Shown: positions 1,457 to 26,378, counted from the whole stretch's first letter. The stretch: DNA of 63,839 nucleotides, filler included, from Octopus bimaculoides (GCF_001194135.2; 7 parts of 7 records of this genome joined end to end with filler, not necessarily neighbours in it), one strand, 5' to 3'. A program made the numbers and translations. The notes: generated from the sequence alone by a model not told the origin.

Positions 1457-1526
1457 CAGAAGAAACACTTTTTGAGTTTGACCGATCAATGTTGCTTAAC
1501 ATAGATACAGCTGTGAAGTGTTGTTC
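1457..1526 (-). CDS. Same gene, last visible exon: EQHFTAVSMLSNIDRSNSKSVSS(G); no stop codon reached, so the gene probably continues left of the window
   Basis: Acceptor ccttaaataatag, donor CTG|gtaagt; 70 nt, phase 0-1, in frame with the 6017 exon. Confidence 0.7.
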
Positions 1527-2369
1527 CTATTATTTAAGGTTAATGAAAAAATAAAAATTAATTGTATTTTTATTTGGAAATTAATATCTTGGAAATAGGA
1601 AAATAAGTGTAGAAATGAAAAGTACTAACAAATTTTTTATAGTATTTTGACGGAAGAGAAAACTATTTCTCTTAGTATATGGAATGGCCACTACCTCCAC
1701 CGCCGCAGCCACTATCACCACCACCACCACCACCACCATTTTTATATCTGAAGCATTTCTATATCTGTTCATATTACCTTGCTAAACAACATCATAGTTC
1801 TTTCAAAAAGTTTAGCTCTGACAATTATTGAGGAAAACTATTTCCTGTACAATCTAATTAGCTAACATTTCAGCAGAGCTAATTATACTATTTTCTCACT
1901 TATAGCTGCCTACTAAAGAAGGAATTGAAAACTTTAAAAAGAACCATGTTTAAATATTGACATGAAAACAGAAACATTTAATTTCAAATGCTGTGTTTTC
2001 TTATAATAAGTGTAGATTATCACGCTCAATGGAATAATATCGCCCAACACTATGGATTAGTGAAATTAAAATAAAAACAATGTTGGAAGTGTGAAGAACT
2101 TTAACAAGAGAAAACAATTTGAAAGCCAAAAGATGCTTCTAAAAGACCTGCACTTTTTGCAGATAGAGATAGAAAATTGCAAGGATGTTGAGTACAGTTG
2201 AGACATATTATTGCAAACCTTTGATTACTACTGAAGTCGTAGCGGGAGCCCAGCCAAGAAACAAACAATAAGATAATGGTAAAGTGCTATAATAGATAAG
2301 GTACAAGTTTGGAAAGATAAATAAAAAAAAAAAGAAAAGATATTAAGGGAATATTTAGAATTTAGATAA

Positions 2370-3060
2370 CTTGAACCACCTGTAAGAACAAGTTAGATTT
2401 AAAGACAGAAAAAAGTTCAGCCTAAACATCACTTGCATCAAAGAATATGAACATCTGCAAGAACTACAGGTATCTCTTCTCCTTCACTGACTAAACAACC
2501 CACCAAAAGTTGAGATGGAATATTGACTTAGGTTTATCTATTCAAAAGGAAAAACAACAGCAGGTAGTGTTTAGATAGTATGCACAATGTGAAAGAAGAA
2601 GTGTTCAGAAATTTTGCAAGAATATTCTGGAATATCACAGAACTTTTCAAAATTATTTGGGTTTCCTTGTTGAGGGGTGACAATGAATATCTATGGATAT
2701 GTTTCAATGGGAAAAATAAAAGAGCTCCATAAGCAATGATGATAAGAAAAGCTGTGAAAACTGGAAATCTCAGACAGGTTAAGTAATTTTAACCACAAAT
2801 TTTTACTATCGATGTTATGTAGAAAAAGAAAAAACTTTCCATGGGGTCAGCATTATTAATTGATACAAAGATAGAAAGGGATAAATTACATCGGAGAAAT
2901 TATGATGATCTCAAGCAAATAAATAATGGCAGTAACACTGAAAAACTAATACAGAATACAATGAATTTGAAAAGGAGGCAACTTTTGGCTTGTATTAGAC
3001 CATAGTGTCATAAATGACATATTTCTGGTCTGAGAACTACAAGAGGACTGTCACAAAAAA
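2370..3060 (+). mobile_element. Highly decayed RTE-type LINE endonuclease region
   Basis: Short remnants such as ELD...LNITCIKEY and IIWVSL.RGDNEYL; many stops. Confidence 0.3.
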
Positions 3061-3759
3061 CATCTTTAATAGCTTGTGATATCATCTCATTCTCTCTAAT
3101 CCAGACTGATTAAAGATAGTGTATAGATCTATAAATGTTCTTTGGATTATGATATGTGAGGATTTACAATGAACTAGTTACAGAGTACATGTAAGAAGCT
3201 GCTCTTTAACACAGGGAACATTTTCTTCTCTCTCATATCAATCACATCTATCATTTTAAAACAGAAAGAATACACTTGATAATGCATGCAGTTATGTATG
3301 TATACATCAAGCTATGCTAAAAAAGTAAGAAAATCTTAGAAGTGATATTACTGCCCAAATGTCAAAAACTAACACAAATATGAATTGTTAACATAATGCA
3401 TTAAAAACTCTTAAACATATAAACACAAACACTTGAACACAAAATCAATACAGAAAAGTAAAGATACTATCTTCCTACTAAATCATTGGCTGCAATTTTA
3501 AATTTTGCTGCACTCTGAACAACAATATCCAAAGCAGCCAACACATAAAGCACAAAATCTGAGTGACAACAAAAGTACCCATGCCACATGGCATAAATTT
3601 AGTACAAAAAATCAAACTCACAAATGGTCTAAAAAAGAAAAATACTTTTATGGAATCAAAAATTATCCCAGCACTGGACCTTTCACATCCTTAATTACAC
3701 CCTTACAGGGCAAACCAAGTTGAACCTTGTGAGAGGATTTGATAGACAAGGACCAGCTT

Positions 3760-4100
3760 TTCTAGTTCACAAAGTGAGAAAGGCATGACAATTAAAGATA
3801 TGAAGTGAGGGAAGGCCTCGGATCCATCAGAAATTTCCACCAAGATGCTTAAAATATATGTAAGAATAGAATATGGTCTAGTCACCTGTACAGTTACTCC
3901 TCCTTCAAAAATATTCACAGGGCTGCTTTCAAGGAAAAAAGGAATAGGAGGAAGAACTGCAACACCATATCATCAAATCCTGACCAGACCTTCAACTGCA
4001 GCTACTATGGTCGTGTCTGCCTGTCCTGCATTGGCCTTGTCAGTCACAAGTATGCCTGCAGTCAATGTGGACCAGCCCTTTCTTGATTTTCATTCATGAA
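3760..4100 (+). mobile_element. RTE LINE fragments: a pre-RT piece followed by a BovB-like C-terminal zinc-knuckle tail
   Basis: IKDMK.GKASDPSEISTKMLK, then AAFKEKRNRRK...TFNCSYYGRVCLSCIGLVSHKYAC*. Confidence 0.65.
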
Positions 4101-4842
4101 ACCAAGCCAAGTTGAGAGAGAGAGAGGGAGAGAGAGACATCATTCAATGACTGGTGTAGCAGCATTATAGTCAACTGTTACAAGGGTGAAGAAGATGTCT
4201 CTTGAATGCATACAATTCTTGTGTGTTGTATTCTGTTAATATCTGGTGTTGTTTGTAGTATATATATATCCTTCTCTGCATCATTGTTTTAATGCCCACT
4301 TTTTCAAGCATGCATGGGTCAGTTGGAATTTGTAGAGGCAGATTTTTAATAGCCAAACTCACCTGTTTCCCAGTTAGGTAATGTTTCACCATGACCAGGC
4401 ATGTTTTTCAGAGAAGACTGAAAATGAAAGACACCCTTGAAGAATTCCTTTGATCATATGGTCACTCAGTTTGTCAACCTGGGCTAAGCAACAACATAGA
4501 CTTTGTGGTACACGTATTCAAGAAACAAAGAAGTTTCTACAAAAATTATTTCACAGGGTAATATAATATTATATAACCCAGATTACACCACTGAAACAAT
4601 CAACTTGAATAAAATTTAGTTTTAGTCAAGTAAATAAAGAAAAACCAAAACTATGCAGAAAACTAATAAAAAATAAAAACCCAACATAAGCCACAGTAAA
4701 ACTTGATTCAAAGTAATTAGCAGTGTTAAAAACTCTAATAATGGCCACACTACATCATATTTCACAGTAACAGGTCTTCGTCTAATTATTTAATCTGTAA
4801 GAAAAACCAGCCAAATCTTCTAATGAACACTATCATCTATAG

Positions 4843-5095
4843 CAGTGGTACTTAACAGAGGTCCATATGACCCTTAAGATCCATATAAAATTTTGTTGTT
4901 AAAATTTGTGCAATAAATTGCTTGCATTTCTACAATATGTCTAAATATTTTAACAATTTTTAAAATAAAATTCTTAATAATATATAATTATAAAAATATA
5001 TTAGGAATTTTTAAGCATTGAATAACTATGAGGGTCCAACTGAGTAAAATAGGTATTGAAGGAGTTCATAGGTAAAAAATGATTGAGAACCACTG
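4843..5095. mobile_element. hAT (Charlie-like) MITE
   Basis: Termini cagtggtacttaa / ttgagaaccactg; 8-bp flanks atctatag / atctgaag resemble an NTCTAGAN target. Confidence 0.7.
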
Positions 5096-5250
5096 ATCTG
5101 AAGGAAGGAAGGAAGGAAGGACACACTGAACGATGTACTAGAAGTATTGAGCCTGGAAAAAGAAAGAAAGACAAGAAGCTCAACCCTGTTTTATCAGAGT
5201 TAATCTTGGGATAATCAATAATTATAGCATTTTCAATATACTTCAACAGT

Positions 5251-5632
5251 TGTTGGCACTCCGTTGCTTACGACGTCAAGGGTTCCAGTTGATCCGATCA
5301 ACGGAACAGCCTGCTCGTGAAATTAACGTGCAAGTGGCTGAGCACTCCACAGAGACGTGTACCCTTAACGTAGTTCTCGGGGATATTCAGCGTGACACAG
5401 TGTGACAAGGCTGATCCTTTGAATTGCAGGCACGACAGAAACAGGAAGTAAGAGTGAGAGAAAGTTGTAGTGAAAGAGGACAGCAGGGTTCACCACCATC
5501 TCCTGCTAGAGCTTCGTGGGGCTTTAGGTGTTTTCGCTCAATAAACACTCACAACGCCCAGTCTGGGAATTGAAACCACGATCCTATGACTGCGAGTCCA
5601 CTGCCCTAACCACTGGGCCATTGTACCTCTAC
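5251..5632 (-). mobile_element. Full-length tRNA-headed SINE, family B, with TSD
   Basis: A-box tggcccagtgg, B-box-like ggtttcaattcc; 11-bp TSD ACTTCAACAGT at 5240-5250 and 5633-5643. Confidence 0.9.
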
Positions 5633-6016
5633 ACTTCAACAGTAAACAAACACATTTACCAAAATCAGTAAAAAAAAAGAAGACAAAAACAGAAAAAGTA
5701 AGATATGTTCTTGCTCCACTAAATATCATAAAAGCAACCAAAAAATCCCAAAATTTTAAAGTCTCAGATTTTAAAATCCCAAGTATACACCTAAAACATA
5801 CAGGCTGGAAGAAAATATTGCATTCACAAACAATTATAACACCATTTCTAAATCTATAGAATTTGGAAACTGAGTAAAATTACAATTCAAAAATTTTACA
5901 AGTTTCAGCTAAAATAACATTACATAGGACCATAACCCATTCCAGCAGTATTGGTACACACATCATAAGCAATACATCAAACTTTATTTAAAATTAAATA
6001 AAAAAATATTTATTAC

Positions 6017-6123
6017 TGTGTCCACAGTGAAACTGATTTCAAATGTTCCAGAATGAATAAGTGAGTTCAAATCCCTTAAAACTTGATCGCTGGATAAAGA
6101 GTTACTTTTCTGTTCCTTAGTTT
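6017..6123 (-). CDS. Same gene, exon: (K)TKEQKSNSLSSDQVLRDLNSLIHSGTFEISFTVDT
   Basis: Acceptor ttctttttattgacag, donor ACA|gtaata; 107 nt, phase 1-0. Confidence 0.75.
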
Positions 6124-6292
6124 CTGTCAATAAAAAGAAAATAACAAACATATATTCTGTTATGGACAGAATACAAAGAAACAACCTTTAATTAGGAATG
6201 TTTACTTCATCTTTAATACCCTCAAGAAAAAGAAATATGATGTGAATCTCAAAAACATTTCAAAAGCACCATGATTTTATGCAATTCTTCGA

Positions 6293-6654
6293 ATAATATT
6301 GGTTTCAAATTTCGGCACAAGGCCAGNNNNNNNNNNNNNNNNNNNNNNNNNNNNNNNNNNNNNNNNNNNNNNNNNNNNNNNNNNNNNNNNNNNNNNNNNN
6401 NNNNNNNNNNNNNNNNNNNNNNNNNNNNNNNNNNNNNNNNNNNNNNNNNNNNNNNNNNNNNNNNNNNNNNNNNNNNNNNNNNNNNNGGAGGGAGTAAGTT
6501 AATTACATCAACCCAAGTGCTCAACTGGTACTTATTTTATCGACCCCAAAAGGATGAAAGGCAAAGTCAGCCTTGGCAGAACTGGAACTCAGAATAAGAC
6601 AATGCTGCTAAGCTTTTTGCTTGCTGTGCAAACAATTCTGCCACCTCGCCCCCT
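6293..6654 (-). mobile_element. tRNA-headed SINE, family C, with a Meta-like core (other copies near 7005-7208, 32315-32466, 37285-37480, 41960-42155, 44160-44335 on -; 61776-61985, 62022-62145 on +)
   Basis: Head ggcgagctggcagaatcgttagc...gagttcaaattcc and core gactttgcctttcatcctt..ggggtcgataaaataagtaccag, recurring. Confidence 0.8.
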
Positions 6655-7703
6655 AATTCCTTGAATAATATCAAAAATAATTTTCAATGGAACCTGATGT
6701 GACTCCTGATCTTGCCAGCTCCTGTCATACCATCCAACCCGTGCTAGTAAAATTAAATGATGATGATGATGATGTTCAATCAGAGTCCTTTGATAATAAT
6801 ACTAAATGAACTGTTTACTACTCAAATGATATAAACATCTCATGAGTTATTCTTGAACATTTTTCCACCTCTACTTCAACCATCTCTATAAAGTGTTATC
6901 ATGCTATTGTATTGATATTTCTTGAAATACTTGACTGAAATGGTGGTCTGTTTCTATAACAATAGTACTTCTCAAAAGTTTCATTATATATATATATAAT
7001 CTTTTCTACTTTAGGCACAAGGTCTGAAATTAGCAGGGATGTAGCTAGTTGATTACATTGACACCAGTGCACAACTGGTACTTATTTCATTGACCCTGAA
7101 AGGATGAAAAGCAAAGCTAACTTTGGTGGAATTTGAACTCAGAATAGATGAAATTACACTAAAGCATTTTGTCTGGTGTGCTAACAATTCTGCCAGCTCA
7201 TCACCTTTATATATATATATAATGCAAAATTAAAAAGCAGTTAAGAACACAGCCTTCCAAAACTGGTGAGACTGATTTGGCTAATGTTTCTTTTGTGATG
7301 TTGATAGTCAACACTTGTAGGAAAATCATAGACAGAGCAAGAATTCTAGGAGTCTGTCATTCTGATAAGGAAGTACTGTGCATTGTGGTTAGTGCCAAGA
7401 CTTGTGCAGAGAGGTCAATACAGGTAATGAGAAAAGGAAAGATGAATGAATGAGAAGGGCCAGAGTAGAAGCGATATGTGATCAGCCGACTCCTGTAGAA
7501 GGAAAGATAGGCTTCTTCTCTCTGCACATGAAGAATATAAAAAGTCAATAAAATTTAAAATTTTCTTTAATTTAAATAAAAAGAATTAGAAATTTAATGC
7601 TCTAGGTTAGATGATTTGTTTGTGTTTAATAAAGTTTTAACTAAATAATCTCAGAAAACTATAAAGTTAATAAAAATAGTAAAATATAAAATACCTCACT
7701 TAC

Positions 7704-7913
7704 TGGTATATATATTACAGTCGTCAGAATCTTGGTTGTTTGTAGGTGATTCAGTGAATAACTGGCACACTTTCCTTCCTTTACAATATGTAAATGCCTT
7801 ACAGTTGTTTTTAATACATGAAGATGCACATTCATTTGGAGTCTGTATTTTTAATTGTGTCTTTGCCTTAAGATTTGGATTAGGCTTAAGATTTGATTTA
7901 ACAGTGAATAATT
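7704..7913 (-). CDS. Same gene, PAN/apple-domain exon: LFTVKSNLKPNPNLKAKTQLKIQTPNECASSCIKNNCKAFTYCKGRKVCQLFTESPTNNQDSDDCNIYT
   Basis: Acceptor tttatctatttctgcag, donor CCA|gtaagt; 210 nt, phase 1-1. Six cysteines with PAN spacing: CxxxC...CxAFxYC...CxL...CxxY. Confidence 0.88.
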
Positions 7914-8642
7914 CTGCAGAAATAGATAAATACGAATGATCGAAATATATTTTAGATTAATGTTTTGTTAACCCTTTTGATACCATAGAAGGAAAGTTGT
8001 GAGTGATATATAGAAAAAAGTGAGAATGGGATGAAAAGAAACTTGTCAGAACATACAGCAATAGTACAACAGAAACTTGGATTTCCATGAAATAAGAAAC
8101 ACATGGTACCAATAGGCAGGCAGCTTTGCTAGGAGATTCTCATGCCAGCCACTGTTAGCAGCTTTATTGATGATAAGTGTGCAATACTTCTTTTGCTTGA
8201 AATGGTTCTTAATTGTTTGTCAGAGTATAGTAAAGAAGAATAATTAAGTTAGTACTATCAAATTTAATACAGTAAGCATTAGAAAGCTAATTAAAGATAA
8301 TTCTAAAATTACAATGTTGTAAAAACAATATAATTGATAAAGTTTTAATTATTTCAGCAAGTACAAGAGTAACCTCAGGATAAGTTTCAGTCTTATGATG
8401 ACTTCATTAGCAAAGTATAGACATTACTACACATGCTGAAGTATTAATGAAAGTAAATAAATACACAAAAATCTATGCTAGATGACATAGAAAACTAGAA
8501 TTATTTTGAGAATAAATTAGACAGAGACATGATCTATATAAAAAATAACTTTGTTAATGTTAATATATTTAATGCAGAGATCTTTAAAAAACTCATCAAA
8601 TATAATTATGCACTGGTAAAAAAACAGCAGAAACAAGCATCA

Positions 8643-9280
8643 TTATTACCTCCGCCAAGGAAGGAGGTTACGTTTTCTTTGGCATTGGTTTGTCCGTCTA
8701 TCCGTCTGTGTGCAAAGTAACTCAAAAAGTTGCGAATGGTATTTGATGAAACGTGCAGGAAAAGTTAGTAATGACACAAGAAACAGATGATGAAATTTTG
8801 GCAGGTATTCGGGAATTTTTATGGATTCTTAAAGGATTTATCATTTTTTATATTTACTTTACATGAAGTATTACAATGTTGTGTTCTTTGATTATCTCCC
8901 TTGAAAACATGTTCATCGTTTCAACGTAACCTATGGTAGCGTTACTGTTTCCAAAGTTTATTTTCGTTTCTCTATTAGTAATTTTACTTGCGTTGTGTGT
9001 GTATCACTCAAGATTTAGGTAATTGTTGTTTCTTTTTAGTGGTATGGTGAAACTAGCTTGCTGTGGTCATTGATGTATTATAACTGCTTAAGATGATTCC
9101 TGTTTTTAAAGGTTTTTTTAAAAAAATCATATGGCTGTGTTATTTTTTTTTAACCCTGCTAAAGAGGTTATGTTTTTGCCGGTGTTGGTTTGGGAAATTG
9201 GGTGATTTTCAGCATGTGTGTATATGGGTGGAAATGAGCTGCTTGGCAGAGATCTGTGCTCTCTGAGTGCTTTTCTAGTT
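8643..9280 (+). mobile_element. Non-autonomous Helentron-type element (HINE/DINE-1-like)
   Basis: 5' sub-TIR acctccgccaag (8648-8659), its imperfect complement cttggcagagat (9242-9253), then a 3' hairpin gtgctctctgagtgc and ttttctagtt. Confidence 0.65.
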
Positions 9281-9588: not shown

Positions 9589-9630
<42 letters not shown>

Positions 9631-9928
9631 CAGATTTATTTCTATTCAACTTCCAAATTCACTCACAAGGCTTTGGTGAGTCTGAGGCTATAGTAAAAGA
9701 CATTTGCCCGAGATGTTATGCAGTGGGGTCGAATCTGAAACCATGCAGTTGGGAAGCAAATTACTTGATCACACAGCTATGCCCAATCTTTCATAAAAAT
9801 CAAAATAATTATGATAATATTGGGAAATGAAAATTGTGTGAAGTATTGTTAACATCAAAAGTTATACATTTTAGATTATAGTAATTAACAAGTTAGATAT
9901 TATGAAAATAAATATTGAAAATATTTAC

Positions 9929-10093
9929 CAATAGGCTGTGGACTTGGATCAATTAAAGAGAATCTGAAATATGTTTTGTCCTCATCATAAGAAAGCTCAG
10001 GATTTTGAATATTTATGAGAGGTAGATGTGTAAAATCAATTATCTTATTTACTGCTGCTATAATAAAATTTACTGATCTTAGTTTGTATGCTC
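9929..10093 (-). CDS. Same gene, exon: AYKLRSVNFIIAAVNKIIDFTHLPLINIQNPELSYDEDKTYFRFSLIDPSPQPI(E)
   Basis: Acceptor attatctttttcag, donor TTG|gtaaat; 165 nt, phase 1-1, open throughout. Confidence 0.82.
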
Positions 10094-10344: not shown

Positions 10345-11433
10345 AGGATGCATCTGGAGCCATGACTTTTCCTTGGGAATAAGTTCATCATCATCATCCG
10401 AAAAGTGCTTCCTCTTCAAAAAGACTTCACAGTTGGAAAGAGGTGGAAATTAGATGGTGTGAAGTCGGGAGGAGGACGGATTTCATAGCAGCAGGAGTGT
10501 GCTTTCATCTGGGCAACATGTGCATTGTCTTGAATATACCATGCCTCTCTGCTTTGATGGTGTCCTGCAATCTCTGTAGCAGAGACGCATAATATGCCCC
10601 ATCAATTGTGGTACTCTTTCCAGAAAATCCATCATCATTACTCCACACTGGTCTCAAAAGACTATGAGCATCTTTGCCTGCTGAGAGCTGGACATGAGCC
10701 TTTTTGGAGGTGGTGAGTTATCATGTTTCCATTGCTTTGACTGGATTTTAGTCTCAGGATCATAACAATGGACCCATGTTTTAGCTTGTGTGATATGTCT
10801 GCTGAAAATGTCCTACTTGTTTTCTTGGCACATTGTCAAAAGAGCCTGGGAGCAATTGACTTGTTCCTGCTTCTGAAAAGGTGTGAGCATCCGGAGAATC
10901 TATTGCACAGACAACTTCTGCATGTGCAAATGGTTGTGAATGATTTTTTCCACAGACCCTACACTTACCTTCACTTCTTGGAATAGCTGCAGAATAGTTA
11001 CGCAGTGATCCTCCAAAATGGTGGCTTTCACTTTATGGAGGGTGTCATCATCAATGGCAGAATGTGGCTATCCAGAAATAGAAGCAATTTCCACTGATGT
11101 CTGACCATATTTGAACTGGCAATGTCAGTTCTTGACTATGTCATATGATGATGCATTGTCACCATAAACTTCTTTCATCTCATCGAAGTCTCTTTTGGTA
11201 TACGACCTTTCTAGTATAAGAACCTGATCACTGATCTGCATTCAACTGCCTCCATTATAACATCTTAGTCCACTTCAACAGCCGTAAATAATAAACGAAT
11301 ACTAGTGGAAAGCTGTAATTTACAATGTAACATTTACAGACATGTATGATTAATGTATGATTATACCTGTACAAGTTCTGTTTCCTGCAATAACTAGAAG
11401 TGGATCAGAGGAAACCTTTAGTGAACGCCTCAT
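10345..11433 (-). mobile_element. Mariner transposase pseudogene, 3' end truncated
   Basis: ATG at 11255 (MEAVECRSVIRFLY...VYGD); WVHCYDPETKIQSKQWKH; PDFTPSNFHLFP...KRKHFSDDD; several stops and frameshifts; degenerate TIR near 11405-11433. Confidence 0.9.
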
Positions 11434-12530: not shown

Positions 12531-13078
12531 GGATCTTTTTTAAAACGGGGGCCACATTTTTCATTAACGAAACACTTTGAAACTTGGAACACTGGTAGAA
12601 TGTGTCATATAAAACATCTTTTTCTCTTAGTCTTCTTAAAAACAAAAGAAATCCATAAATTATTCCATGTTAAAGTTGTCGTATTTCTGTAATTTCAACC
12701 AATCACTGACGTCCATTCAGCCGATATACATTAAGTGCCGACTACATAAACAAACGATTCTGAAACAATTAACCCTAACCCTAACCCTAGGGTTAGGGTT
12801 AGAGTTAAAGCAAATTTAAAATGAAAAAAGCAAATAAAACGAAGAATCGTTTGTTTATGTAGTCGGCACTTAATGTATATCGGCTGAATGGACGTCAGTG
12901 ATTGGTTGAAATTATCGAAATAAGACAATTTTTTACATGAAATAAATTCGAATACAAAAATATTTTTCTGTTCTATAACACAAAATAGATAAGTATACGA
13001 AGTTTGAAAGTCTTTCGGTACCAAAAACACTATGTAAAACATTAATGAAAAATGTGGCCCCTGTTTTCAAAAAGATCC
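12531..13078. mobile_element. Palindromic MITE with nested inverted repeats and a central telomeric-repeat palindrome
   Basis: 37-bp TIRs starting ggatcttttt; perfect 70-bp inner IR (12691-12760 / 12844-12913); (CCCTAA)n/(TTAGGG)n centre at 12769-12808; near-8-bp TSD aataaagg / aataaggg. Confidence 0.85.
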
Positions 13079-13988: not shown

Positions 13989-14112
13989 CTTTAAATGTTA
14001 TTTGTAAATCAGTTATTTTGTTGTTTTCTCTGTAGCATGAAGAAATATCAAATGCCGACATCAAAATATCATCAAGAAATTCGAAATAGTTATCAGTTCT
14101 ATAGAAGTTACT
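13989..14112 (-). CDS. Same gene, exon: SNFYRTDNYFEFLDDILMSAFDISSCYRENNKITDLQITFK(G)
   Basis: Acceptor catatatttcag, donor AAG|gtaaaa; 124 nt, phase 0-1. Contains an FDISxCY motif. Confidence 0.85.
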
Positions 14113-15895: not shown

Positions 15896-15961
15896 GGTAT
15901 ATATATATATATGCACGCACACACACATGCAGACACACATTTAAATTTTAAAAATACTTAC

Positions 15962-16021
15962 GCCATCTGACACAATTTCCAATTTCACTGGTACAGAGAA
16001 TGGACTACCACTCCAACCTTC
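15962..16021 (-). CDS. Same gene, exon: EGWSGSPFSVPVKLEIVSDG
   Basis: Acceptor atatttctttatag, donor GGC|gtaagt; 60 nt, phase 0-0. Confidence 0.85.
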
Positions 16022-18844: not shown

Positions 18845-18868
18845 TATTATTATCATTATTGTTATTGC

Positions 18869-18912
<44 letters not shown>
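18845..18912. repeat. (TTA/TAA)n microsatellite at the 3' end of the Dong/R4 element
   Basis: Direct reading. Confidence 0.95.
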
Positions 18913-19720
18913 GATTTTCTTCCTTCAATCTTCTTTCTATTTTTATGGATATTTTCTTGACACCTAGGGCAAAGAAACTCACTGTATACATTGATAGGCC
19001 ATTAAAATGAACATACCAGATTGTTCGTTTACAGAATCAGATGAAGTTATGTAGAAAAATAATTATGTGCATGTAATGTAATTGTTCTTACAGTGACAAT
19101 GCTCTTCTCTACATGTAATGTACTAGTTAAAACAATTTTTTGCACTTCTTGCAGAAATGGTAAACTAGGGATCATTCTCAAATAATTTTCAGTTCCTTTT
19201 TTTGATCATCCCAAGTGCTCCTACAATCACTAGTATTATAACCACCTTGAAATGCCACATGTTTTCAATTTCAATGAGCAAATCTTTGTATTTTCTGATC
19301 TTGTAAAATTCTTTTGTTGCAATATTATGATCACAAGGGATACTCATGTCAATCAATAAACAAACTTTATTATTTTGGTCTTTTACAACAATATCCAGTT
19401 TATTAGCTTTGATGGTTCTGTCTAAAAGTACAGGTAAGCCCCAAAGACTCATTATAGTTTTCTCTCTCAGTTATAGCCCCAGGGTGGTGCTTATACCATT
19501 TTTCAGCAGTTTTGATTTTATAATGCCAACATATTAACCAATGTAGATATTGGCCAATTCTGTCATGTCTTGATTTATATTCTATAGGTGCTAAAACTTT
19601 ACATCCAGAGTTAGAAACCATTATTTGACTTCCTGGCACATGGTGAAATTCTTTTCTGTTATGCAGTTCTGTTTGGTTAAACCTCAATGCTGATTTGTTT
19701 TAGTGTCTAAATTTTGATTC
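18913..19720 (-). mobile_element. R4/Dong-clade non-LTR retrotransposon 3' fragment (zinc knuckle and restriction-like endonuclease)
   Basis: SGCKVLAPIEYKSRHDRIGQYLHWLIC, RTIKANKLDIVVKD...LLIDMSIP (PD-D/ExK), KYKDLLIEIENMW, VIVGALG, LQEVQKIVLTSTLH. Confidence 0.88.
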
Positions 19721-20331
19721 CAAGTACTTTGGAAATTTTATAACTATAACACCCAGAACAATAACAGGTGTAGAATAGTTATGAAACTAATTAAAATCTC
19801 TAGTATACTGAAATGGTAAAACCTTACCAAATCACTATTTGCTATTTTCTTCGATAACTTAGACATAGTAGGTGATATTCATGAACAGGTGTTGAATAAA
19901 GAAACATCTTGCAATAAAACATTAAAATTAATGCCAAACTTATGTATTTAAGGGCAGTGCCAATGACAATCTTCCCGAAAATTATTTAGTAAAAATTTCT
20001 GAAAATTACATACAGTTTTCATCTAGACCATACAGTGTATTTTAAAACAATATAGAAGTAACAATTGTTTTGAACTAAACTTTCGTATTAACATAATATT
20101 CTTTGAGACAACTATTTCTGTTTCAATTATCACTGCAATGTTTCTTCTCTGACAAAGAAAATAAGAGCAGCAGATACAGTATTTCACTACTAAAACAATA
20201 ACAATGTGCATACATTATGTATATGATATTAGTAACATTAACATTATAGTGTGGCTTCTATTACATAATTTGAATTTATTCTACTTGTTTGATGCAATTG
20301 TAAATCAGCAAATAGTTTTTACTCTACTAGT

Positions 20332-20549
20332 TTGAGGGAGCACTGAAAAGTTCCTGGCTTTGAGGGTATTGCAAAAGGCCTGGCCGGAGGTCCAATCCTC
20401 CGAGTTCTTCTACAAGACTTAGAAAAACTGAAGAACTGCTGTAATAAGTGTGTGAATCTGAGAGGGGAGTATGTTGAATAAAATCATAATCAACTGATCC
20501 TCCTGTATTTTCTTTTACCCAAAGCCAGGAACTTTTCAGCATCCCCTTG
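20332..20549 (+). mobile_element. Mariner-derived MITE keeping the transposase C-terminal codons
   Basis: TIRs gagggagcactgaaaagttcctggctttg / caaagccaggaacttttcagcatcccct; internal LEKLKNCCNKCVNLRGEYVE*. Confidence 0.85.
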
Positions 20550-20859
20550 TATGTATTTCAGACTAGTGATTCCAATTGCATTTCCAAAGTGAGGCACATG
20601 TATGGAATTGATAAGTGGCAAAAACAGTGAAATACTGTATCTGGTGCCCTTGTCTCCACTTCCAGGGTGATTTCGTTTTTTCTATTTCTAAAGTATACTG
20701 TTTTTTTTTATGCTATACATCTTGAAAGGACTCTTTCTCAGACAAAAAATTGCAGTTTCTGGCTTGTAAACAACACACATACATTAAGCATATGATAATA
20801 TGATTAATTAGCTCTTTACAATGCTTATCATAAAACTAAATTTTAAAATTGTCACTTAC

Positions 20860-20946
20860 ATCCAGAAAGTAGAAGCGAAAGAGGTTATTTTGAAATGAAG
20901 CCACATAGGATTCAAAGATATTTGTCAACATACCACGAACATGTTG
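20860..20946 (-). CDS. Same gene, exon: QHVRGMLTNIFESYVASFQNNLFRFYFLD
   Basis: Acceptor ttctcttttatag, donor GAT|gtaagt; 87 nt, phase 0-0. Continues YVGQ into VRG. Confidence 0.85.
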
Positions 20947-21299
20947 CTATAAAAGAGAATAAAACATGTTTTTTCGTTAAATTAAATTAATCACAAAATT
21001 CTACTTGTTTATTGGAGTACATTAAATTAAAAGCCATATATGTAACTGAACTTATGCTTGAATTTTTTCTTAAGGGGAAATATATTAAAATGAAAATAAA
21101 CATTCCATTTTGTAATATTTCTTTAAATCTTTCATTTTAATAATTTAAATTAAGGAGAAACAAGCAGTACTCATTGTCTTTACAGGCACTTCCTTTGCAG
21201 TCGATAGAGATAACTGAGCAAGGTAAATATGTTTAATGTTCAGTTTGAATAATTTTATGTTAGTGGTGAGCCAAAAATTTCATTAGAGTGAGTTTCAGA

Positions 21300-23115
21300 A
21301 GAATACAGTTTCAAAAAGAAGGGATTAGAAAAAAAACCCCTATACTTGGCTTTTGTGGACTTGGAGAATGCTTTTGACAGGGTCCCTCGATCCCTTATCT
21401 GGTGGGTGATGTGGAAGCTGGGGATTGATGAATTGTTAATAAGGGCTGTAGAGGCCCTATACAGAGATGTCGTTAGTAAGGTTAGGGTTGGCGATGAGTA
21501 TAGTGAAGAATTCTGGGTAGAAGTAGGGGTCCACCAAGAATCAGCCCTCAGCCCATTCTTATTTATCATTGTCCTTCAGGCAGTAACAGGAATTCAAGAC
21601 AGGTTGTCCCTGGGAGCTCCTCTATGCTGATGACCTGGCCCTCATAGCAGAATCACTACCAGAACTAGAGAAGAAATTCCAGGAGTGGAAGCAAGGTTTA
21701 GAGTTGAAGAGCCTTAGAGTCAATGTTGCAAAGACCAAAGTTCTAGTAAGTGGGAAGGTGACCACATCACACACCCATTCAGGTAGGTGGCTCTGCTTGA
21801 TCTGTAGAAAAGGTGTAAGTAGAAATTCCATAAGATGTACCCAGTGTAAGCTATGGACGCATGAAAAGTGCAGCAACATCAAAGGAAGATTAACCGGGAA
21901 GATAGCTTTTGGGTGCAGCAGATGCATAGGGGCAATAAATACCACAGATGCTAAGAAAATAAATTCCATCACATGCCAGGGGAAAAAACTAGAAGTAGTT
22001 GATAGCTTCTACTATCTAGGGGACCAAGTCAGTAGTGGAGGTGGATACTCAGAGAGCATGACCACTAAAATAAGAATTGCCTGGGCAAAGTTCAGACAGC
22101 TTCTACCCCTACTGATGACAAAGGGCCTCTCGCTCAGAGTGAAAGGTAGATTGTACGATGCATGTGTGCGAACTGCCATGCTTCATGGCAGTGAAACATG
22201 GGCCATGATTGCTGAAGACATGTGTAGGCTCAAAAGAAATGAAGCTATCATGATCCGTAGGATGTGTAATGTCAGTGTGCACACATGACAGAGTGTATGT
22301 GCTCTGAGAGAAATGTTAGACATAAAAAGCATTGGATGTGGCATGCAAGAGAGACATTTGAGTTGGTATGGTCGTGTATTACAGATGGATGAGGAGAGCT
22401 GTGTGAAGAAGTGCCACTCCCAAACAGTAGAAGGAATCTGGGATAGAGAGAGACCCAGGAAGACATGGGATGAGCTGGTGAAGCATGACCTTCAAACATT
22501 GAGCCTCACAGAAGAAATGACGAAAGACAGAGACCTCTGGAGATATGCTGTGACTGAGAAGACCCAGCAAATAAAGTGAGATCACAGCTATAACCTACAC
22601 CAATGTTGCATAACCAGCCAACTCAAAAAGTATCCTTGGATCATAGGGCGACATGCCGTGCTTGAAGAGACCTATTGAGTCAAGTACATCAACATCAAAA
22701 TGAAATCAAATCACAATCAAATGGAAATTGTAGTTGTGGTCCCTGTGCTATCTGAACATGGTCGATGCCAGCCCCCTTGCCCCGACTGGCTTCTGTGCTG
22801 GTGGCATGTAAAAAGTATCATCTGAACGTGGCCTATGCCAGCACCGCCTTGACTGACTCCCGTGCTGGTGGCACGTAAAAAGCACCATCCGATCATGGTC
22901 AATGCCAGCCCCCTCTAGCCCCTGTGCTGGTGGCACATAAAAAGTACCCACCACACTCTTGGAGTGGTTGGTGTTTGGAAGGGCATCCAGCTGTAGAAAC
23001 ATTGCCAGATCAGACTGGTGCCTGGTGCAGCCTCCTGGCTTTCCAGACCCCAATTGAACCGTCTAATCCATGCCAGCATGGAAAACGGACGTTAAATGAT
23101 GATGATGATGATGAT
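21300..23115 (+). mobile_element. 5'-truncated RTE-superfamily LINE: RT with a PHD-like insertion, tandemly repeated 3' UTR and (GAT)n tail; frameshifted
   Basis: AFVDLENAFDRVPR, GVHQESALSPFLF, YADD at 21623-21634, KTKVLVSG, VDSFYYLG, LSWYGRV, ERPRKTW; frameshift near 21600 and stop at 22286. Confidence 0.95.
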
Positions 23116-24414
23116 ANNNNNNNNNNNNNNNNNNNNNNNNNNNNNNNNNNNNNNNNNNNNNNNNNNNNNNNNNNNNNNNNNNNNNNNNNNNNNNNNNNNN
23201 NNNNNNNNNNNNNNNNNNNNNNNNNNNNTAATCCATGCCAGCATGGAAAACGGACGTTAAATGATGATGATGATGATGATAGTTTATGGGCTTATAGTAT
23301 GAGACATGATAGAGATGACTGAATAGAAGGTAGTAGGTAGTATGTATACACATTTTACTCAGTTGCTTCATAGAAGATGCCAGTGCATTAACAATAATGA
23401 CATTTTAACAGTATTAGATGACACAAAGTAAGGACATTACATTGAAAAGGCAACATATTAAGCAATGTAAAGGATGTGATACTGTAATAGCAGTAAGTGA
23501 AACCATGTAAGGACATAAAATATAATGGTTGTAGATAAGACAATACAAAGACATTGCATATAACAGCAAAAGATTAACAGCAATAAATGAGATAAAGCAA
23601 GATATGATAATAGGTAGAAAATGCTGAACATTAATGAGCTATAAAGCAAATCACCATTTTGTTGTAAGCCAGAATGTGAATGTGTGTAGTATGCACATTA
23701 TCCCAGTGCAGACTGATGCAAATTAACATATCATAAAACTACCATCAAACTAACATTTCATATTCTATGAAAATATTTCAACAGATGGAAGGATTTACAT
23801 GCAACTCATATGCTTCCTGAATATGCATCGTTAAATATGATAGCACATGGACTAGTGGTTAGGGTGTTGCACTCATGATCGTGGGATTATGGTTTCAATT
23901 CCTAGACCAGGTGGTGCATTGTGTTCTTGAGCAAAACACTTAATCTCATGCTGCTCTATGATTATCATTTCAATACCTGACGCATGGTACATCTTGCACT
24001 TGTTCAAGCAATGTCGATTTGATGGAGTGAACTAATGTACAGCACATACATTCGATCACTATAAACAAATCATTTTGTGCAGGTTGTTTGTAAAAGCTGA
24101 ACTCTCGTACGTTGTCTTTAATGGGAAATACCACCATCACATATGATGGCAATCCATGATGAGGCCAATGAGATAAATGCAAAACTTCATTTCCAAATAT
24201 TCTTTTCTTTTATCTGTTAAAGTACTTTAAAATAGCTGTTCTCTATTCTGGTATGAGCAAGAAAAATTAAATGTCTTTATGGGACTTGACTAGAAAATTT
24301 CTTTTGATACTTGGATGCTTTCCTTAATTCAGTTGCTCAACTCCAAAATGTGAGCAACTAAGGATGAATATACATAGAATTAGAAGAAATTATTTTCTAT
24401 TTCAGAAGAATAAT

Positions 24415-24804
24415 TGTTGTTGTTGGCACTCTGTCGCTTACGGCGTCAAGAGTTCCAGTTGATCCTATCAACGGAACAGCCTGCTCGTGAAATTAACATG
24501 CAAGTGACTGAGCACTCCACAGACACGTGTACCCTTAATGTAGTTCTCGAGGAGATTCAGCATGACACAGAGTGTGACAAGGCTGACCCTTTGAATTACA
24601 GGCACAACAGAAACAGGAAGTAAGAGTGAGAGAAAGTTGTGGTGGAAGAGTACAGCAGGGTTCACCACCATCCCCTGCCGGAGCCTTGTAGAGCTTTAGG
24701 TGTTTTCGCTCAATAAACACTCACAACGCCCTGTCTGGGAATCGAAACCACGATCCTATGACCGTGTGTCCGCTGCCCTAACCACTGGGCCATTGCGCCT
24801 CCAC
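24415..24804 (-). mobile_element. Full-length SINE, family B, with TSD
   Basis: Head gtggaggcgcaatggcccagtggttagggc; 12-bp TSD CAGAAGAATAAT at 24403-24414 and 24806-24817. Confidence 0.9.
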
Positions 24805-25008
24805 ACAGAAGAATAATACGCTTTGTCTAACACAACCCATTATTTCTGGTAGTTTTAAAAAAATATTTTCATCTTGCATAATAATATTTAGTATTTGTTT
24901 CAGTTTTGATTTCATCAACAGTGAGCCAGGGTATATCTAATCTGCTAGTTTTTCAACTAAATAATAAATGAGATAAAAAGGAAATGTAATAAAACTGATA
25001 TTACTTAC

Positions 25009-25148
25009 TTGGCCAACATACTTATATGTTTTGTCAAAATAGAACAACTGTGCACCACTTTCCATTCTGCTTTGTGACACATCAAAAGCTTGGAAAAGAG
25101 GTTGAATTTGGCAGGATCCATTAAATTTGTCTATCACATAGGAAACAC
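25009..25148 (-). CDS. Same gene, exon: VSYVIDKFNGSCQIQPLFQAFDVSQSRMESGAQLFYFDKTYKYVGQ
   Basis: Acceptor cacttatttaaag, donor CAA|gtaagt; 140 nt, phase 1-0. Shows the GVxYxIDxxxGxC...YxYxG pattern. Confidence 0.87.
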
Positions 25149-25285
25149 CTTTAAATAAGTGAATAAATGAAAAGAATAACTACCATAATTAAAATATTCA
25201 TTTGAAAATTATTAGATATCTTTTTAGAAACACTTAATTAGTAATGCTACTTTTTTTATATATTAAAATTCTTCTTGTTTACATA

Positions 25286-26146
25286 CAAGGTGTATAGGTT
25301 AAATTTGACAAATTTTTATGCCTCGTTTCTTCAAGATGTATTGGTGAATGGTCAACAGCATTGGAGAGCATAAAGATTAAAGATTAAAATTGTTGAGAAA
25401 AAGTTAGCTGACATGGAAGACTGGAAGCCATCTGAATATTGGAAAAGAGTTACCTATCTCATGATTCACATAAGTGTCAAAATGCTGACATCATGACTGC
25501 TGTTCAATGCTCTGTGAACACTGTAAGGGCCATGTGACATAGACATGTCCCACATATTATGAAAGCCTAGTTCATTCCCCCAAGCTGTAATGGGCTTTGT
25601 GTGTGTCTCCAGTGAAGGTGATATTATGTTACTCCACGTCTTTGAACAGGGCCTTAGGCTCAATTCAGACAGCTATGTGAAGCAGCTGGAAATTGTGGTT
25701 AAACCCTGCCTGGAGACGGGTGCTGTTGGAAAGCCATATGTGTGGCTGCATGTTTTTTTACTCCTTGCCATATGCCCAGAAAAGTCAGAAGTGGTTGTCT
25801 GAATTTCACATGCCCCAATTTCTGGCCTCCTAATTCTCCTGATTGTAATCCTGTGGATTATTGTGTGAGGGGCATGGTTGAGAAAGGCATCAACTGCTCT
25901 GCCTGAAACACCAAAGCCAACCTGGTGGCCAAGATCAAGGAGGTCTTTGATGATCTTCTCAGGGATACTGTGAGTAAAGCATGCATGAAGCCATGATGGA
26001 AGCTGAGGGTGGCTACTTTGAGTAATCTCTTAGCCATAATCTAGTTGAGGTTTTAAAATTTTTTTTAGAATACTTTTATTTTAGTATGGGATTTTGTGTT
26101 TTCTTTTCCTTTTATGAGAACTGTGAAATTTAGCCCAAATATCCTG
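25286..26146 (+). mobile_element. Internally deleted Tc1/mariner element, maT/DD37D-like
   Basis: TA-flanked imperfect TIRs (caaggtgtataggttaaattt / aaatttagcccaaatatcctg); VSSEGDIM...FEQGLRLNSDSYV...GKPYVW and FWPPNSPDCNPVDY. Confidence 0.85.
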
Positions 26147-26272
26147 TATCTATATATTTGTAACAGTATAAATGCGGAGAAATAGAAAAGTCAAGAAATG
26201 AAATACTGTAAAAAACTTATGATTATCATCCTCTAACCTCAAACTTATGATAATTGTATAATAGAAACTTAC

Positions 26273-26378
26273 CTCTTGTAAAATCTTGTATAACATCTGA
26301 TGGTCCACTGCATAAATTTGCACAGTGATTTTGGTTTACATCGAACCTTGATAAATTTTTCGATCTATCGTAAAATAT
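26273..26378 (-). CDS. Uncharacterised LolA/ependymin-like + PAN gene, first visible exon: IFYDRSKNLSRFDVNQNHCANLCSGPSDVIQDFTR(G)
   Basis: Acceptor ttcttttcatttag, donor AG|gtaagt; 106 nt, phase 0-1. Shows the YDxxxxLxRxD...IxDFxxG pattern. Confidence 0.85.

What the first reader, a model, noticed from the sequence alone, without database searches (positions are those of the whole stretch)
1457..26378. Hidden nine-exon gene: ependymin/LolA-like domain fused to a single PAN/apple domain
Seen: nine minus-strand exons with canonical GT-AG sites join with matching phases into 356 open codons: IFYDRSKNLSRFD...IQDFTRGVSYVIDKFNGSC...YKYVGQQHVRG...FYFLDEGW...VPVKLEI...FDISSCY...ITFKG...FRFSLIDP, then a six-Cys PAN module, then a linker. 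The ORF track shows only two fragments. Established: ependymin-related proteins such as human EPDR1 adopt a LolA/LolB-like lipid-binding fold, and PAN/apple modules mediate protein or carbohydrate binding. Inference: this is a secreted or membrane-anchored protein coupling a lipid-carrier-like pocket to a recognition module. I recall similar architectures in uncharacterised invertebrate proteins, usually with several PAN repeats. I know of no function for it. It is the best candidate here for an undescribed system.
Basis: partly seen in the sequence, partly recalled or inferred. Interest (0 to 1): 0.75.

Follow-up and report, generated by a model that had tools for sequence, protein, structure and literature searches.

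The report
Fragment of octopus LolA-fold/PAN membrane protein
The nine exons are real, but they are only the middle third of a large octopus gene that is already annotated yet unstudied; it encodes a cell-surface protein combining lipid-carrier-like (ependymin/LolA-fold) modules with PAN/apple modules, so this is a correct but fairly ordinary gene find.

Summary
Observation confirmed. Nine minus-strand exons (26378 to 1457), all AG/GT and phase-compatible, join into 356 open codons. These align without a single gap, 84.8% identical, to aa 516-871 of Octopus vulgaris CAI9729013.1 (1143 aa, "hypothetical/Apple domain-containing protein"). Window and O. vulgaris locus are collinear. Both assembly gaps are intronic and hide no exon.

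Interpretation partly supported. The PAN module passes Pfam's threshold. The N-terminal module misses Pfam's Ependymin threshold, but an AlphaFold2 model (pLDDT 84) finds human EPDR1 first in the PDB, then only LolA-superfamily proteins. A newer Pfam release already tags the ortholog as PF25898 LolA_2nd_metazoa.

"Nine-exon gene" and "single PAN" are window-edge artefacts. The whole gene spans about 98 kb and encodes a signal peptide, two to three LolA-like units, three PAN modules and one transmembrane helix. Relatives occur across molluscs, an annelid and a rotifer; every one whose source name I checked is labelled uncharacterised.

Evolution between the two octopuses is nearly neutral at the amino-acid level (dN/dS 0.81), yet the frame, splice sites and all ten cysteines are kept.

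Likely a type I surface protein presenting hydrophobic-ligand grooves plus PAN binding modules; this function is inferred, not shown. New member of a known, uncharacterised kind.

The parts
26273..26378 (-). Exon A (106 nt, aa 1-35 of the joined peptide). It starts inside the LolA/EPDR-like unit (IFYDRSKNLSRFD...); the first ~35 residues of the unit are encoded upstream of the window.
   Evidence: AG/GT, phase 0 in and 1 out. Ungapped counterpart at L004 58422-58527. No upstream exon in 26379-29166.
25009..25148 (-). Exon B (140 nt, aa 36-82). Beta-hairpin motif GVSYVIDKFNGSC, holding the family-invariant Cys48 and an N-G-S sequon.
   Evidence: Cys48 is invariant in 103/103 units. hhalign puts it opposite EPDR1 Cys113.
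20860..20946 (-). Exon C (87 nt, aa 83-111). Strands of the LolA-like sheet. The family's 'CDVF' cysteine is replaced by Thr here.
15962..16021 (-). Exon D (60 nt, aa 112-131), containing VPVKLEI.
13989..14112 (-). Exon E (124 nt, aa 132-172). End of the LolA-like part (FDISSCY, with invariant Cys157) and start of the beta-alpha-beta-beta tail sub-domain.
9929..10093 (-). Exon F (165 nt, aa 173-227). Tail sub-domain of the unit: helix 179-194 and strands 201-208 and 212-220.
   Evidence: Conserved across the family (consensus SPxRxQN...TLLD).
7704..7913 (-). Exon G (210 nt, aa 228-297). One complete six-Cys PAN/apple module, the first of three in the whole protein.
   Evidence: Pfam PAN_1 E=3.5e-7, 30.4 bits against cut-off 21.4. 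HGF N-domain hits in the PDB. Against a third octopod contig, L001, the exon is 88.6% identical with no indels and all six Cys kept, while the flanking introns are 82-85% identical with indels.
6017..6123 (-). Exon H (107 nt, aa 298-333). First half of the linker between PAN1 and PAN2.
   Evidence: AG/GT. Matches P0002 aa 813-848. L004 74891-74997.
1457..1526 (-). Exon I (70 nt, aa 334-356). Second half of the linker. The open frame continues into an exon beyond the window's left end.
   Evidence: AG/GT. P0002 aa 849-871. The next exon (aa 871-952, PAN2) is at L004 82649-82894, about 2.2 kb past window position 1.
23117..23228 (.). Assembly gap inside intron 2. It is spurious: about 50 bp is duplicated on both sides.
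   Evidence: The flanks map to L004 61132 and 61182, which overlap. No residues are missing at the Q82|Q83 junction.
6327..6486 (.). Assembly gap inside intron 7, equivalent to about 19 bp in O. vulgaris.
   Evidence: The flanks map to L004 74688 and 74668. No residues are missing at the exon G/H junction.

Best explanation
SHOWN. The window, from an Octopus species about 7% diverged from O. vulgaris, carries nine internal exons of the ortholog of O. vulgaris CAI9729013.1 / A0AA36B7T2. The segment encodes four things: most of the second LolA/ependymin-fold unit (a curved beta-sheet part of about 160 aa held by the invariant Cys48-Cys157 pair); a beta-alpha-beta-beta tail of about 65 aa; the first of three PAN/apple modules; and a 59-aa linker. 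The whole protein, read from the ortholog, is a type I membrane protein: signal peptide, two to three LolA-like units, three PAN modules, one transmembrane helix with a G.G....G motif, and a short basic cytoplasmic tail. It belongs to a family found in all sampled mollusc classes, an annelid and a rotifer; every member whose source name I looked up is labelled uncharacterised or hypothetical.

INFERRED (about 30% for this specific mechanism). The ectodomain presents LolA-type hydrophobic grooves, as in EPDR1, LolA and LprG, which bind lipids or other hydrophobic ligands. The membrane-proximal PAN modules bind a protein or carbohydrate partner. Because there is no catalytic or signalling domain, the protein would act as a capture, adhesion or co-receptor molecule. 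The tandem units might pair within one chain the way EPDR1 pairs as a homodimer.

Amino-acid replacement between the two octopuses is nearly neutral while the frame is preserved. That fits either a fast-evolving recognition interface or weak constraint.
For: Exon model and orthology:
- Gapless alignment, 84.8% identical, to aa 516-871.
- Collinear introns, 87-93.5% identical.
- Conserved AG/GT at all exons in both species.

Fold:
- AlphaFold2 model pLDDT 84.1, pTM 0.71.
- Foldseek top hit EPDR1 6e7o_A (E=6.2e-4, TM 0.57 over 160 columns); most of the other top-50 hits are EPDR1 orthologues or LolA-superfamily proteins.
- hhalign against an EPDR1 alignment gives P=0.0012 over 80 columns in the correct register.
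- The four family cysteine columns have the order and spacing of EPDR1 C42/C172 and C113/C210 (PMC6363788); hhalign directly aligns only the Cys48/C113 position.
- Precomputed Pfam PF25898 LolA_2nd_metazoa on the ortholog and relatives.

PAN.

Topology: one C-terminal hydrophobic segment (Kyte-Doolittle score above 2) plus N-terminal signal-like sequences in 11 relatives.

Fusion of the domains in one product is real: L003, a 4.5-kb contig from a Logan assembly of a sequencing run, carries a single uninterrupted 3.9-kb ORF, so it is read as a spliced mRNA (library type not checked); the product carries PF25898 and PAN_1 hits and the C-terminal transmembrane segment.

The frame is maintained:
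- 0 indels in 1069 nt against 6.9 expected from the intron rate (P about 0.001).
- No stop codons (P=0.043) and all ten Cys kept (P=0.16) under a neutral simulation.

Ligand-groove function of the fold: PMC6363788.
Against: - No expression data for this species. The ortholog is itself a gene prediction, with a doubtful C-terminus.
- The window unit misses Pfam's Ependymin threshold, and a profile search of PDB sequences does not find EPDR1.
- TM-scores are moderate (0.43-0.57).
- The unit has lost the cysteine pair equivalent to C42/C172.
- dN/dS is 0.81, and the 54 amino-acid changes match the neutral expectation of 56 +/- 3.7. Residue-level constraint is therefore not demonstrated between these two species.
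- No ligand, partner or tissue is known for any family member.
Confidence: 0.65

Rival explanations
1. One reading: a self-contained nine-exon gene encoding a secreted ependymin domain fused to one PAN module.
For: Within the window only one LolA-like unit and one PAN exon are visible.
Against: The peptide is aa 516-871 of a 1143-aa ortholog. The frame is open at both ends, and the flanking exons lie just outside the window. There is no start codon, signal peptide or stop codon in the segment.
Confidence: 0.02
2. A gene, or this part of it, drifting towards pseudogene status in octopuses. The exons are relics of the spiralian family and evolve neutrally.
For: dN/dS is 0.81. Amino-acid changes equal the neutral expectation. 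Exon divergence (7.4%) is not lower than intron divergence (6.6%). This unit has lost one ancestral disulfide pair. Octopus has fewer PAN modules than bivalve relatives.
Against: No indels (P about 0.001), no stops (P=0.043), all 18 splice dinucleotides and all ten Cys kept in two species. The PAN exon is intact with fewer changes than its introns in a third species. The O. vulgaris ORF is full length.
Confidence: 0.1
3. The multi-domain protein is an annotation artefact: tandem single-domain EPDR-like genes and a PAN gene wrongly merged. This has been reported for EPDR gene models (PMC6280359).
For: McDougall et al. treated models with multiple ependymin domains as mis-predictions. The O. vulgaris protein is only a prediction.
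Against: A 4.5-kb contig, read as a spliced transcript, carries one 3.9-kb ORF whose product has PF25898 and PAN_1 hits and a C-terminal transmembrane segment. The same architecture is predicted independently in many species. Exon phases run through, with no internal signal peptides or stops.
Confidence: 0.04
4. The cysteine-containing module is a BRICHOS-type chaperone domain rather than a LolA/EPDR fold.
For: 10 of 44 family units give sub-threshold BRICHOS hits (best E=0.0074). One whole protein scored 21.6 bits against a cut-off of 25.
Against: All hits are below the threshold. Foldseek returns no BRICHOS structure in the top 50, and EPDR1 and LolA-superfamily proteins dominate the list. 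Newer Pfam assigns a LolA family. The weak Ependymin hit covers only the hairpin motif around Cys48 (aa 27-59), so I suspect, without having seen the BRICHOS coordinates, that the weak BRICHOS hits reflect the same local motif.
Confidence: 0.03
5. The same protein, but with a structural or matrix role (mucus, cuticle or extracellular-matrix adhesion through PAN modules), in which the LolA-like units serve as scaffolds and have no ligand pocket.
For: Single-domain EPDRs are recurrent shell- and matrix-associated proteins in molluscs (papers listed). There is no signalling domain. Sequence evolution is fast.
Against: The fold's known members mostly bind hydrophobic ligands (PMC6363788). Membrane anchoring with a conserved small-residue transmembrane motif suggests a cell-surface rather than a matrix protein.
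Confidence: 0.15

Closest known systems
Octopus vulgaris CAI9729013.1 / UniProt A0AA36B7T2 ('Hypothetical predicted protein' / 'Apple domain-containing protein'), locus OX597823.1:44115894-44216130
   Same: Ortholog. The alignment is gapless and 84.8% identical over all 356 codons, with identical exon boundaries and collinear introns.
   Different: It comes from a different Octopus species (dS about 0.09). The window holds only aa 516-871 of 1143. The protein is a prediction with no known function.
Pfam PF25898 LolA_2nd_metazoa (with PF25899 DUF7959 in the shorter paralogues) - spiralian type I membrane proteins with tandem LolA-like units, with or without PAN modules
   Same: The window's unit is homologous to the units of proteins carrying this annotation (jackhmmer E values 1e-50 to 1e-76; precomputed hits).
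   Different: The HMM is not in the local Pfam copy, so the window peptide could not be scored directly. The octopus unit lacks the first cysteine pair. The PAN number varies from none detected to about five among the relatives scanned.
Ependymin-related proteins (EPDR1/MERP; Pfam PF00811; PDB 6E7O, 6E8N, 6JLA, 6JL9)
   Same: Best structural match. It shares the LolA-type curved sheet, the N-terminal motifs (P..W/F, YD, GV.Y.ID...C) and cysteines placed as in the two conserved disulfides.
   Different: 13-15% identity. Below Pfam's threshold. EPDRs are secreted or lysosomal single-domain homodimers of about 213 aa (PMC6280359, PMC6363788). Here the domain is tandem, carries an extra 65-aa tail, is fused to PAN modules and is membrane-anchored.
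Bacterial LolA superfamily (LprG, LprF, VioE; RseB and MucB listed with poor superposition)
   Same: Fold-level similarity for LprG, LprF and VioE. RseB is also a two-domain protein: a LolA-like domain plus a smaller C-terminal domain.
   Different: No sequence similarity, no disulfides, periplasmic or lipoprotein context. The RseB and MucB alignments have about 20 A rmsd, so the two-domain arrangement does not superpose.
PAN/apple modules (HGF N domain, plasminogen, prekallikrein/factor XI; Pfam PF00024)
   Same: The HMM score is above the threshold and the module has six cysteines.
   Different: It lacks the kringle or protease context of the vertebrate proteins. No binding partner is known.

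Membership tests
Orthologue of O. vulgaris A0AA36B7T2 (spiralian LolA-like/PAN type I membrane protein family) | Collinear locus with the same exon boundaries and high identity | tested here: met
   Gapless alignment, 302/356 identical. All nine exons ungapped with AG/GT in both species. Introns 87-93.5% identical and collinear.
Orthologue of O. vulgaris A0AA36B7T2 (spiralian LolA-like/PAN type I membrane protein family) | Signal peptide, C-terminal transmembrane helix and short cytoplasmic tail | not testable with these tools
   These parts are encoded outside the window. They are present in the ortholog and in 10 relatives.
Pfam PF25898 LolA_2nd_metazoa | Match to the family HMM | not testable with these tools
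   The local Pfam copy lacks PF25898. Only precomputed hits on whole relatives are available.
Pfam PF25898 LolA_2nd_metazoa | Homology to units of proteins that carry the annotation | tested here: met
   phmmer E=2.3e-135 to P0002 and 2.2e-57 to P0003. jackhmmer places the window unit on both full units of each relative. Scallop P0007 reads LolA_2nd, PAN, LolA_2nd, PAN.
Ependymin / EPDR (Pfam PF00811) | HMM score above the gathering threshold (32.3 bits) | tested here: not met
   15.0 bits, E=0.029, aa 27-59 only. No hit when the 297-aa peptide was scanned. 6 of 44 family units give sub-threshold hits.
Ependymin / EPDR (Pfam PF00811) | LolA-type fold (curved antiparallel sheet with groove) | tested here: met
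   Predicted, not solved. AlphaFold2 pLDDT 84.1. EPDR1 chains are the best compact Foldseek matches, probability 1.0, TM 0.50-0.57.
Ependymin / EPDR (Pfam PF00811) | Two conserved disulfides (EPDR1 C42/C172 and C113/C210; PMC6363788) | tested here: inconclusive
   The family has four cysteine columns in matching order and spacing: CxGR 54/103, GNC 103/103, CDVF 71/103, DISxC 103/103. The window unit keeps only Cys48/Cys157. hhalign directly aligns only the Cys48/C113 position.
Ependymin / EPDR (Pfam PF00811) | Single-domain secreted protein of about 200 aa with a signal peptide (PMC6280359) | tested here: not met
   This is an internal unit of a 1143-aa multi-domain membrane protein.
PAN/apple (Pfam PF00024 PAN_1) | HMM score above the gathering threshold, plus the conserved cysteine framework | tested here: met
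   30.4 bits against 21.4, aa 244-287. Six Cys (256, 260, 265, 271, 277, 293) are conserved in O. vulgaris and in contig L001.
BRICHOS (Pfam PF04089) | HMM score above threshold (25 bits) and the BRICHOS fold | tested here: not met
   Best E=0.0074 among 44 units, and no hit on the window unit. No BRICHOS structure among the top 50 Foldseek hits.

The most novel reading that the evidence does not exclude
The spiralian LolA-like/PAN proteins form a previously unstudied class of cell-surface receptors. In this reading, tandem EPDR-type units pair within one chain into an EPDR1-like pseudo-dimer that captures lipids or other hydrophobic ligands. The high replacement rate in octopus would reflect diversifying selection at a recognition interface (microbial lipids, gametes or chemical cues) rather than relaxed constraint.
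Probability: 0.12. Interest if true: 0.6.

Novelty: new member of a known kind. Interest (0 to 1): 0.3.

Why it matters
The main value is corrective. The finding is a true spliced gene that prokaryote-style ORF calling cannot see, but it is a window-truncated piece of a gene already predicted in a sister species, with domain families already in Pfam.

A modest biological interest remains. No member of this Spiralia-wide family has a known function, and I found no paper mentioning it. It shows that the ependymin/LolA fold, usually described as a small secreted single-domain protein, also exists as tandem, membrane-anchored, PAN-linked modules. In octopus it combines strict maintenance of the reading frame with an almost neutral amino-acid replacement rate. 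If a ligand were found, it would give a handle on what animal LolA-fold proteins do, which is still unsettled even for EPDR1.

Tried and rejected
- Single-sequence AlphaFold2 of the 297-aa peptide failed (pLDDT 42.9) and was not used.
- The word-indexed protein search found only an unspliced genomic ORF over the PAN exon, P0001. It missed the ortholog, so it says nothing about transcripts.
- Sequence searches of the PDB, with the single sequence and with the family profile, gave no EPDR1 hit.
- The local Pfam copy gave no family for the N-terminal module in ten relatives.
- The BRICHOS lead was rejected on threshold and fold.
- I looked for further exons in 26379-29166 and 1-1456, by open frames and by tblastn with the ortholog. 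There are none; they lie outside the window.
- The idea that the exon H/I linker repeats the linker between units 1 and 2 found no BLASTP similarity.
- Coupled loss of the first cysteine pair across the family could not be shown, because my N-terminal extensions did not always reach that cysteine.
- Literature searches by accession, by Pfam name, and by the LolA/ependymin/PAN combination found nothing on this family.
- One bacterial hit, P0048 (Cellulophaga repeat protein), was judged spurious: eight short stretches.

Full report
THE OBSERVATION

The window is AT-rich (GC about 0.31-0.47 per kb, mostly 0.31-0.39), repeat-laden eukaryotic DNA. I rebuilt the model from the sequence. The exons are:
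- 26378-26273
- 25148-25009
- 20946-20860
- 16021-15962
- 14112-13989
- 10093-9929
- 7913-7704
- 6123-6017
- 1526-1457

Each exon is preceded by AG and followed by GT, and the phases are compatible. The sum is 1069 nt, or 356 open codons, ending at 1457 exactly as reported. The mechanical ORF list holds only two pieces of the gene.

INDEPENDENT VALIDATION AND THE GAPS

An exhaustive HMMER scan with the first 227 residues gave 102 hits. The best, P0002, is Octopus vulgaris CAI9729013.1 / A0AA36B7T2, 1143 aa, named only 'hypothetical predicted protein' / 'Apple domain-containing protein'.

The 356-aa peptide aligns to its residues 516-871 with no gap at all, 302/356 identical. I fetched the O. 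vulgaris locus (L004, OX597823.1:44115894-44216130; the gene spans 98 kb). The window is collinear with L004 55171-80186, introns are 87-93.5% identical, and every exon has an ungapped counterpart with AG/GT.

Both assembly gaps named by the scan's program are intronic:
- The flanks of 23117-23228 map to overlapping L004 positions, so about 50 bp is duplicated and nothing is missing.
- 6327-6486 corresponds to about 19 bp in L004.
- The ortholog has no extra residues at either junction.

No exon is hidden, and frame continuity across the gaps is not an issue.

The segment is the middle third of the protein. The preceding exon (aa 483-516) sits about 1.1 kb beyond the window's right end. The next exon (aa 871-952, the second PAN) sits about 2.2 kb beyond the left end.

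The whole protein has, in order:
- an N-terminal signal-like sequence;
- a first full unit (aa 183-437);
- the window's unit (aa 516-742);
- three PAN modules;
- one strongly hydrophobic segment (aa 1057-1075);
- a short tail.

'Nine-exon gene' and 'single PAN' are therefore artefacts of the window's edges.

THE FAMILY

Relatives of 600-1450 aa carry two to three copies of the unit, from no detected PAN module to about five, and a C-terminal transmembrane helix with a recurrent G.G....G motif followed by a 20-45-aa basic tail.

The 30 hits whose source names I looked up come from:
- bivalves (Crassostrea/Magallana, Saccostrea, Mizuhopecten, Mya, Mercenaria, Solemya, Tegillarca);
- gastropods (Physella, Pomacea, Aplysia, Haliotis, Lottia, Patella);
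- a chiton (Liolophura);
- Octopus;
- the annelid Owenia;
- the rotifer Seison.

Every family member among them that carries a source name is labelled uncharacterised, hypothetical, unnamed or 'Apple domain-containing'. Two named hits are exceptions outside or at the edge of the family: the bacterial P0048, judged spurious, and the Owenia model P0063, named for a glutamate-receptor domain.

A 4.5-kb contig from a Logan assembly of sequencing run SRR29271461 (L003) carries one uninterrupted 3.9-kb ORF. Its product carries PF25898 and PAN_1 hits and a C-terminal transmembrane segment. Family genes are split into many exons over 38-98 kb in scallop and octopus, so I read this contig as a spliced mRNA; I did not check the library type. 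It shows that the domains are fused in one product and are not merged by annotation error. That point needed checking, because McDougall et al. (PMC6280359) treated multi-ependymin gene models as mis-predictions.

IS THE N-TERMINAL MODULE EPENDYMIN/LolA-LIKE?

By sequence it is borderline:
- The local Pfam gives no Ependymin hit on the 297-aa peptide, and 15 bits against a 32.3-bit cut-off on the unit alone.
- Among 44 family units, 6 give sub-threshold Ependymin hits and 10 give sub-threshold BRICHOS hits.
- A family profile finds no EPDR1 chain in the PDB sequences.
- hhalign against a 24-sequence EPDR1 alignment gives P=0.0012 over 80 columns. The register is sensible: P..W/F, YD, R, GV.Y.ID...C. 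The human EPDR1 query sequence was verified as identical to PDB 6E7O_A.

By structure it is clear:
- AlphaFold2 with the 44-sequence alignment gives pLDDT 84.1 and pTM 0.71.
- Foldseek against 350,542 PDB chains returns human EPDR1 6e7o_A first (E=6.2e-4, probability 1.0, TM 0.57 over 160 columns).
- The other matches that superpose compactly are mouse and frog EPDR1, LprG, LprF and VioE.
- RseB and MucB are also listed, but at about 20 A rmsd.
- A few unrelated chains appear among the top 50: a PNGase, a sandfly salivary protein, a royal-jelly protein and an NTF2-like protein.
- No BRICHOS structure appears.

The family's four cysteine columns are CxGR 54/103, GNC 103/103, CDVF 71/103 and DISxC 103/103. 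They sit in the order and spacing of the two disulfides conserved across EPDR clades, C42/C172 and C113/C210 (PMC6363788). The window's unit keeps only the invariant pair, Cys48/Cys157.

Finally, Pfam hits precomputed with a newer release label the O. vulgaris ortholog, the L003 product, the scallop protein and a clam paralogue as PF25898 'LolA_2nd_metazoa'. The clam paralogue also carries PF25899 DUF7959. The local Pfam copy lacks these models.

Membership of the Ependymin family proper is not met.

Residues 163-227 form an additional beta-alpha-beta-beta tail that EPDR1 lacks.

PAN MODULE

Pfam PAN_1 scores 30.4 bits against a cut-off of 21.4, and the PDB sequence hits are HGF N domains. The six cysteines are conserved in O. 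vulgaris and in a third octopod genomic contig, L001. In L001 the exon is 88.6% identical with no indels, while its introns are 82-85% identical with 15 and 27 gap columns.

EVOLUTIONARY RATE

Between the window and O. vulgaris the exons are 92.6% identical. dS is 0.092, dN is 0.074 and dN/dS is 0.81. By part of the protein, dN/dS is about 0.6 in the LolA-like part and its tail and about 1.0 in PAN; the linker has nine replacements and no silent change.

Introns differ at 6.6% of aligned sites and have 6.45 indel events per kb. That predicts 6.9 indels in 1069 nt, and none is seen (P about 0.001).

In 20,000 neutral simulations:
- P(no stop codon) is 0.043;
- P(all ten Cys kept) is 0.16;
- the expected number of amino-acid changes is 56 +/- 3.7, against 54 observed.

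The frame, the splice sites and the cysteine framework are therefore maintained, but residue replacement is close to neutral. That points either to a fast-evolving surface protein or to weak constraint. I cannot tell these apart with two species.

HOW IT PROBABLY WORKS

Shown: a type I membrane architecture with extracellular LolA-fold units and PAN modules, and no catalytic or signalling domain.

Established for the fold: EPDR1, LolA and LprG present hydrophobic grooves that hold lipids or lipid-like ligands, and EPDR1 is a homodimer (PMC6363788). PAN modules mediate protein or carbohydrate binding (general knowledge of the family).

Inferred: a cell-surface capture, adhesion or co-receptor protein that holds a hydrophobic ligand and is positioned or partnered through its PAN modules. 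The tandem units may pair within one chain as an EPDR1-like pseudo-dimer, and the small-residue motif in the transmembrane helix hints at helix-helix association. I put about 30% on this specific mechanism. By contrast I put at least 95% on the identity and architecture, and about 85% on the fold.

NOVELTY

The gene is an ortholog of an annotated, unnamed protein, and its two domain types are in Pfam. Searches by accession number, by Pfam name and by the LolA/ependymin/PAN combination found no paper on this family. I rate it a new member of a known but functionally uncharacterised kind. Interest is moderate to low.

Noticed in passing
window 5249-5634, 24419-24806, 27297-27680: Three copies, about 91% identical, of a ~385-bp interspersed repeat, all in introns or the flank of the gene. 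Each carries the same spurious ORF (VFIERKHLK...GDGGEPCC). It looks like a young SINE-like element.
   Followed up: partly
window 21343-22579 (+ strand), intron 2: Fragment of a non-LTR retrotransposon. It has a reverse-transcriptase motif (Pfam RVT_1, 26.7 bits, just under the cut-off) followed by a PHD-like zinc-finger ORF. Copies 67-70% identical occur elsewhere in the O. vulgaris locus L004.
   Followed up: partly
window 25359-26134 and 10581-11321: Decayed DNA-transposon remnants. The first contains ...NFWPPNSPDCNPVDY..., which I recognise from memory as a mariner/Tc1-type transposase motif. Both have 69-71% matches elsewhere in L004. Pfam gave no hit on the short ORFs.
   Followed up: partly
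window 23060-23290: The sequence on the two sides of the N gap at 23117-23228 is duplicated (the same ...NPCQHGKRTLNDDDDDD... ORF text on both sides). The flanks overlap by about 50 bp on the O. vulgaris locus. This is an assembly artefact, not missing sequence.
   Followed up: yes
window 852-1289: About 430 bp, comprising the N gap at 951-1037 and a ~240-bp repeat at 1042-1289, corresponds to only about 5 bp in O. vulgaris. This looks like a lineage-specific repeat insertion. The repeat has at least seven copies in L004 (77-88% identical) and a partial copy at window 9653-9775.
   Followed up: partly
window 12657-12948: A ~290-bp region matches its own reverse complement (75% identity), forming a palindromic or foldback repeat in intron 5.
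   Followed up: no
exons of the finding compared with L004: dN/dS is 0.81 between the two Octopus species. Exon divergence (7.4%) is no lower than intron divergence (6.6%), yet there are no indels or stops. This is unusually fast protein evolution for a gene whose frame is maintained.
   Followed up: yes
relatives P0002-P0036 (transmembrane segments): The single transmembrane helix of the family members checked carries a recurrent small-residue motif, G(I/L/V)G....G (for example GIGTFILG, GIGMFILG, GLGIGMLV). This may be a helix-helix association motif.
   Followed up: no
P0063 (Owenia fusiformis CAH1789473.1, 1400 aa): One family unit sits at aa 1005-1211 of a model named for an ionotropic glutamate-receptor ligand-binding domain. 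This is either a real fusion or a merged gene model.
   Followed up: no
P0002 C-terminus (aa ~1098-1143): After ...MKVNFYKLDK the O. vulgaris model continues with a Cys- and Phe-rich tail from two extra exons. The L003/P0003 product ends at the equivalent point (...MKVNFLKMEDQ). The annotated 3' end of the O. vulgaris gene may be wrong.
   Followed up: no
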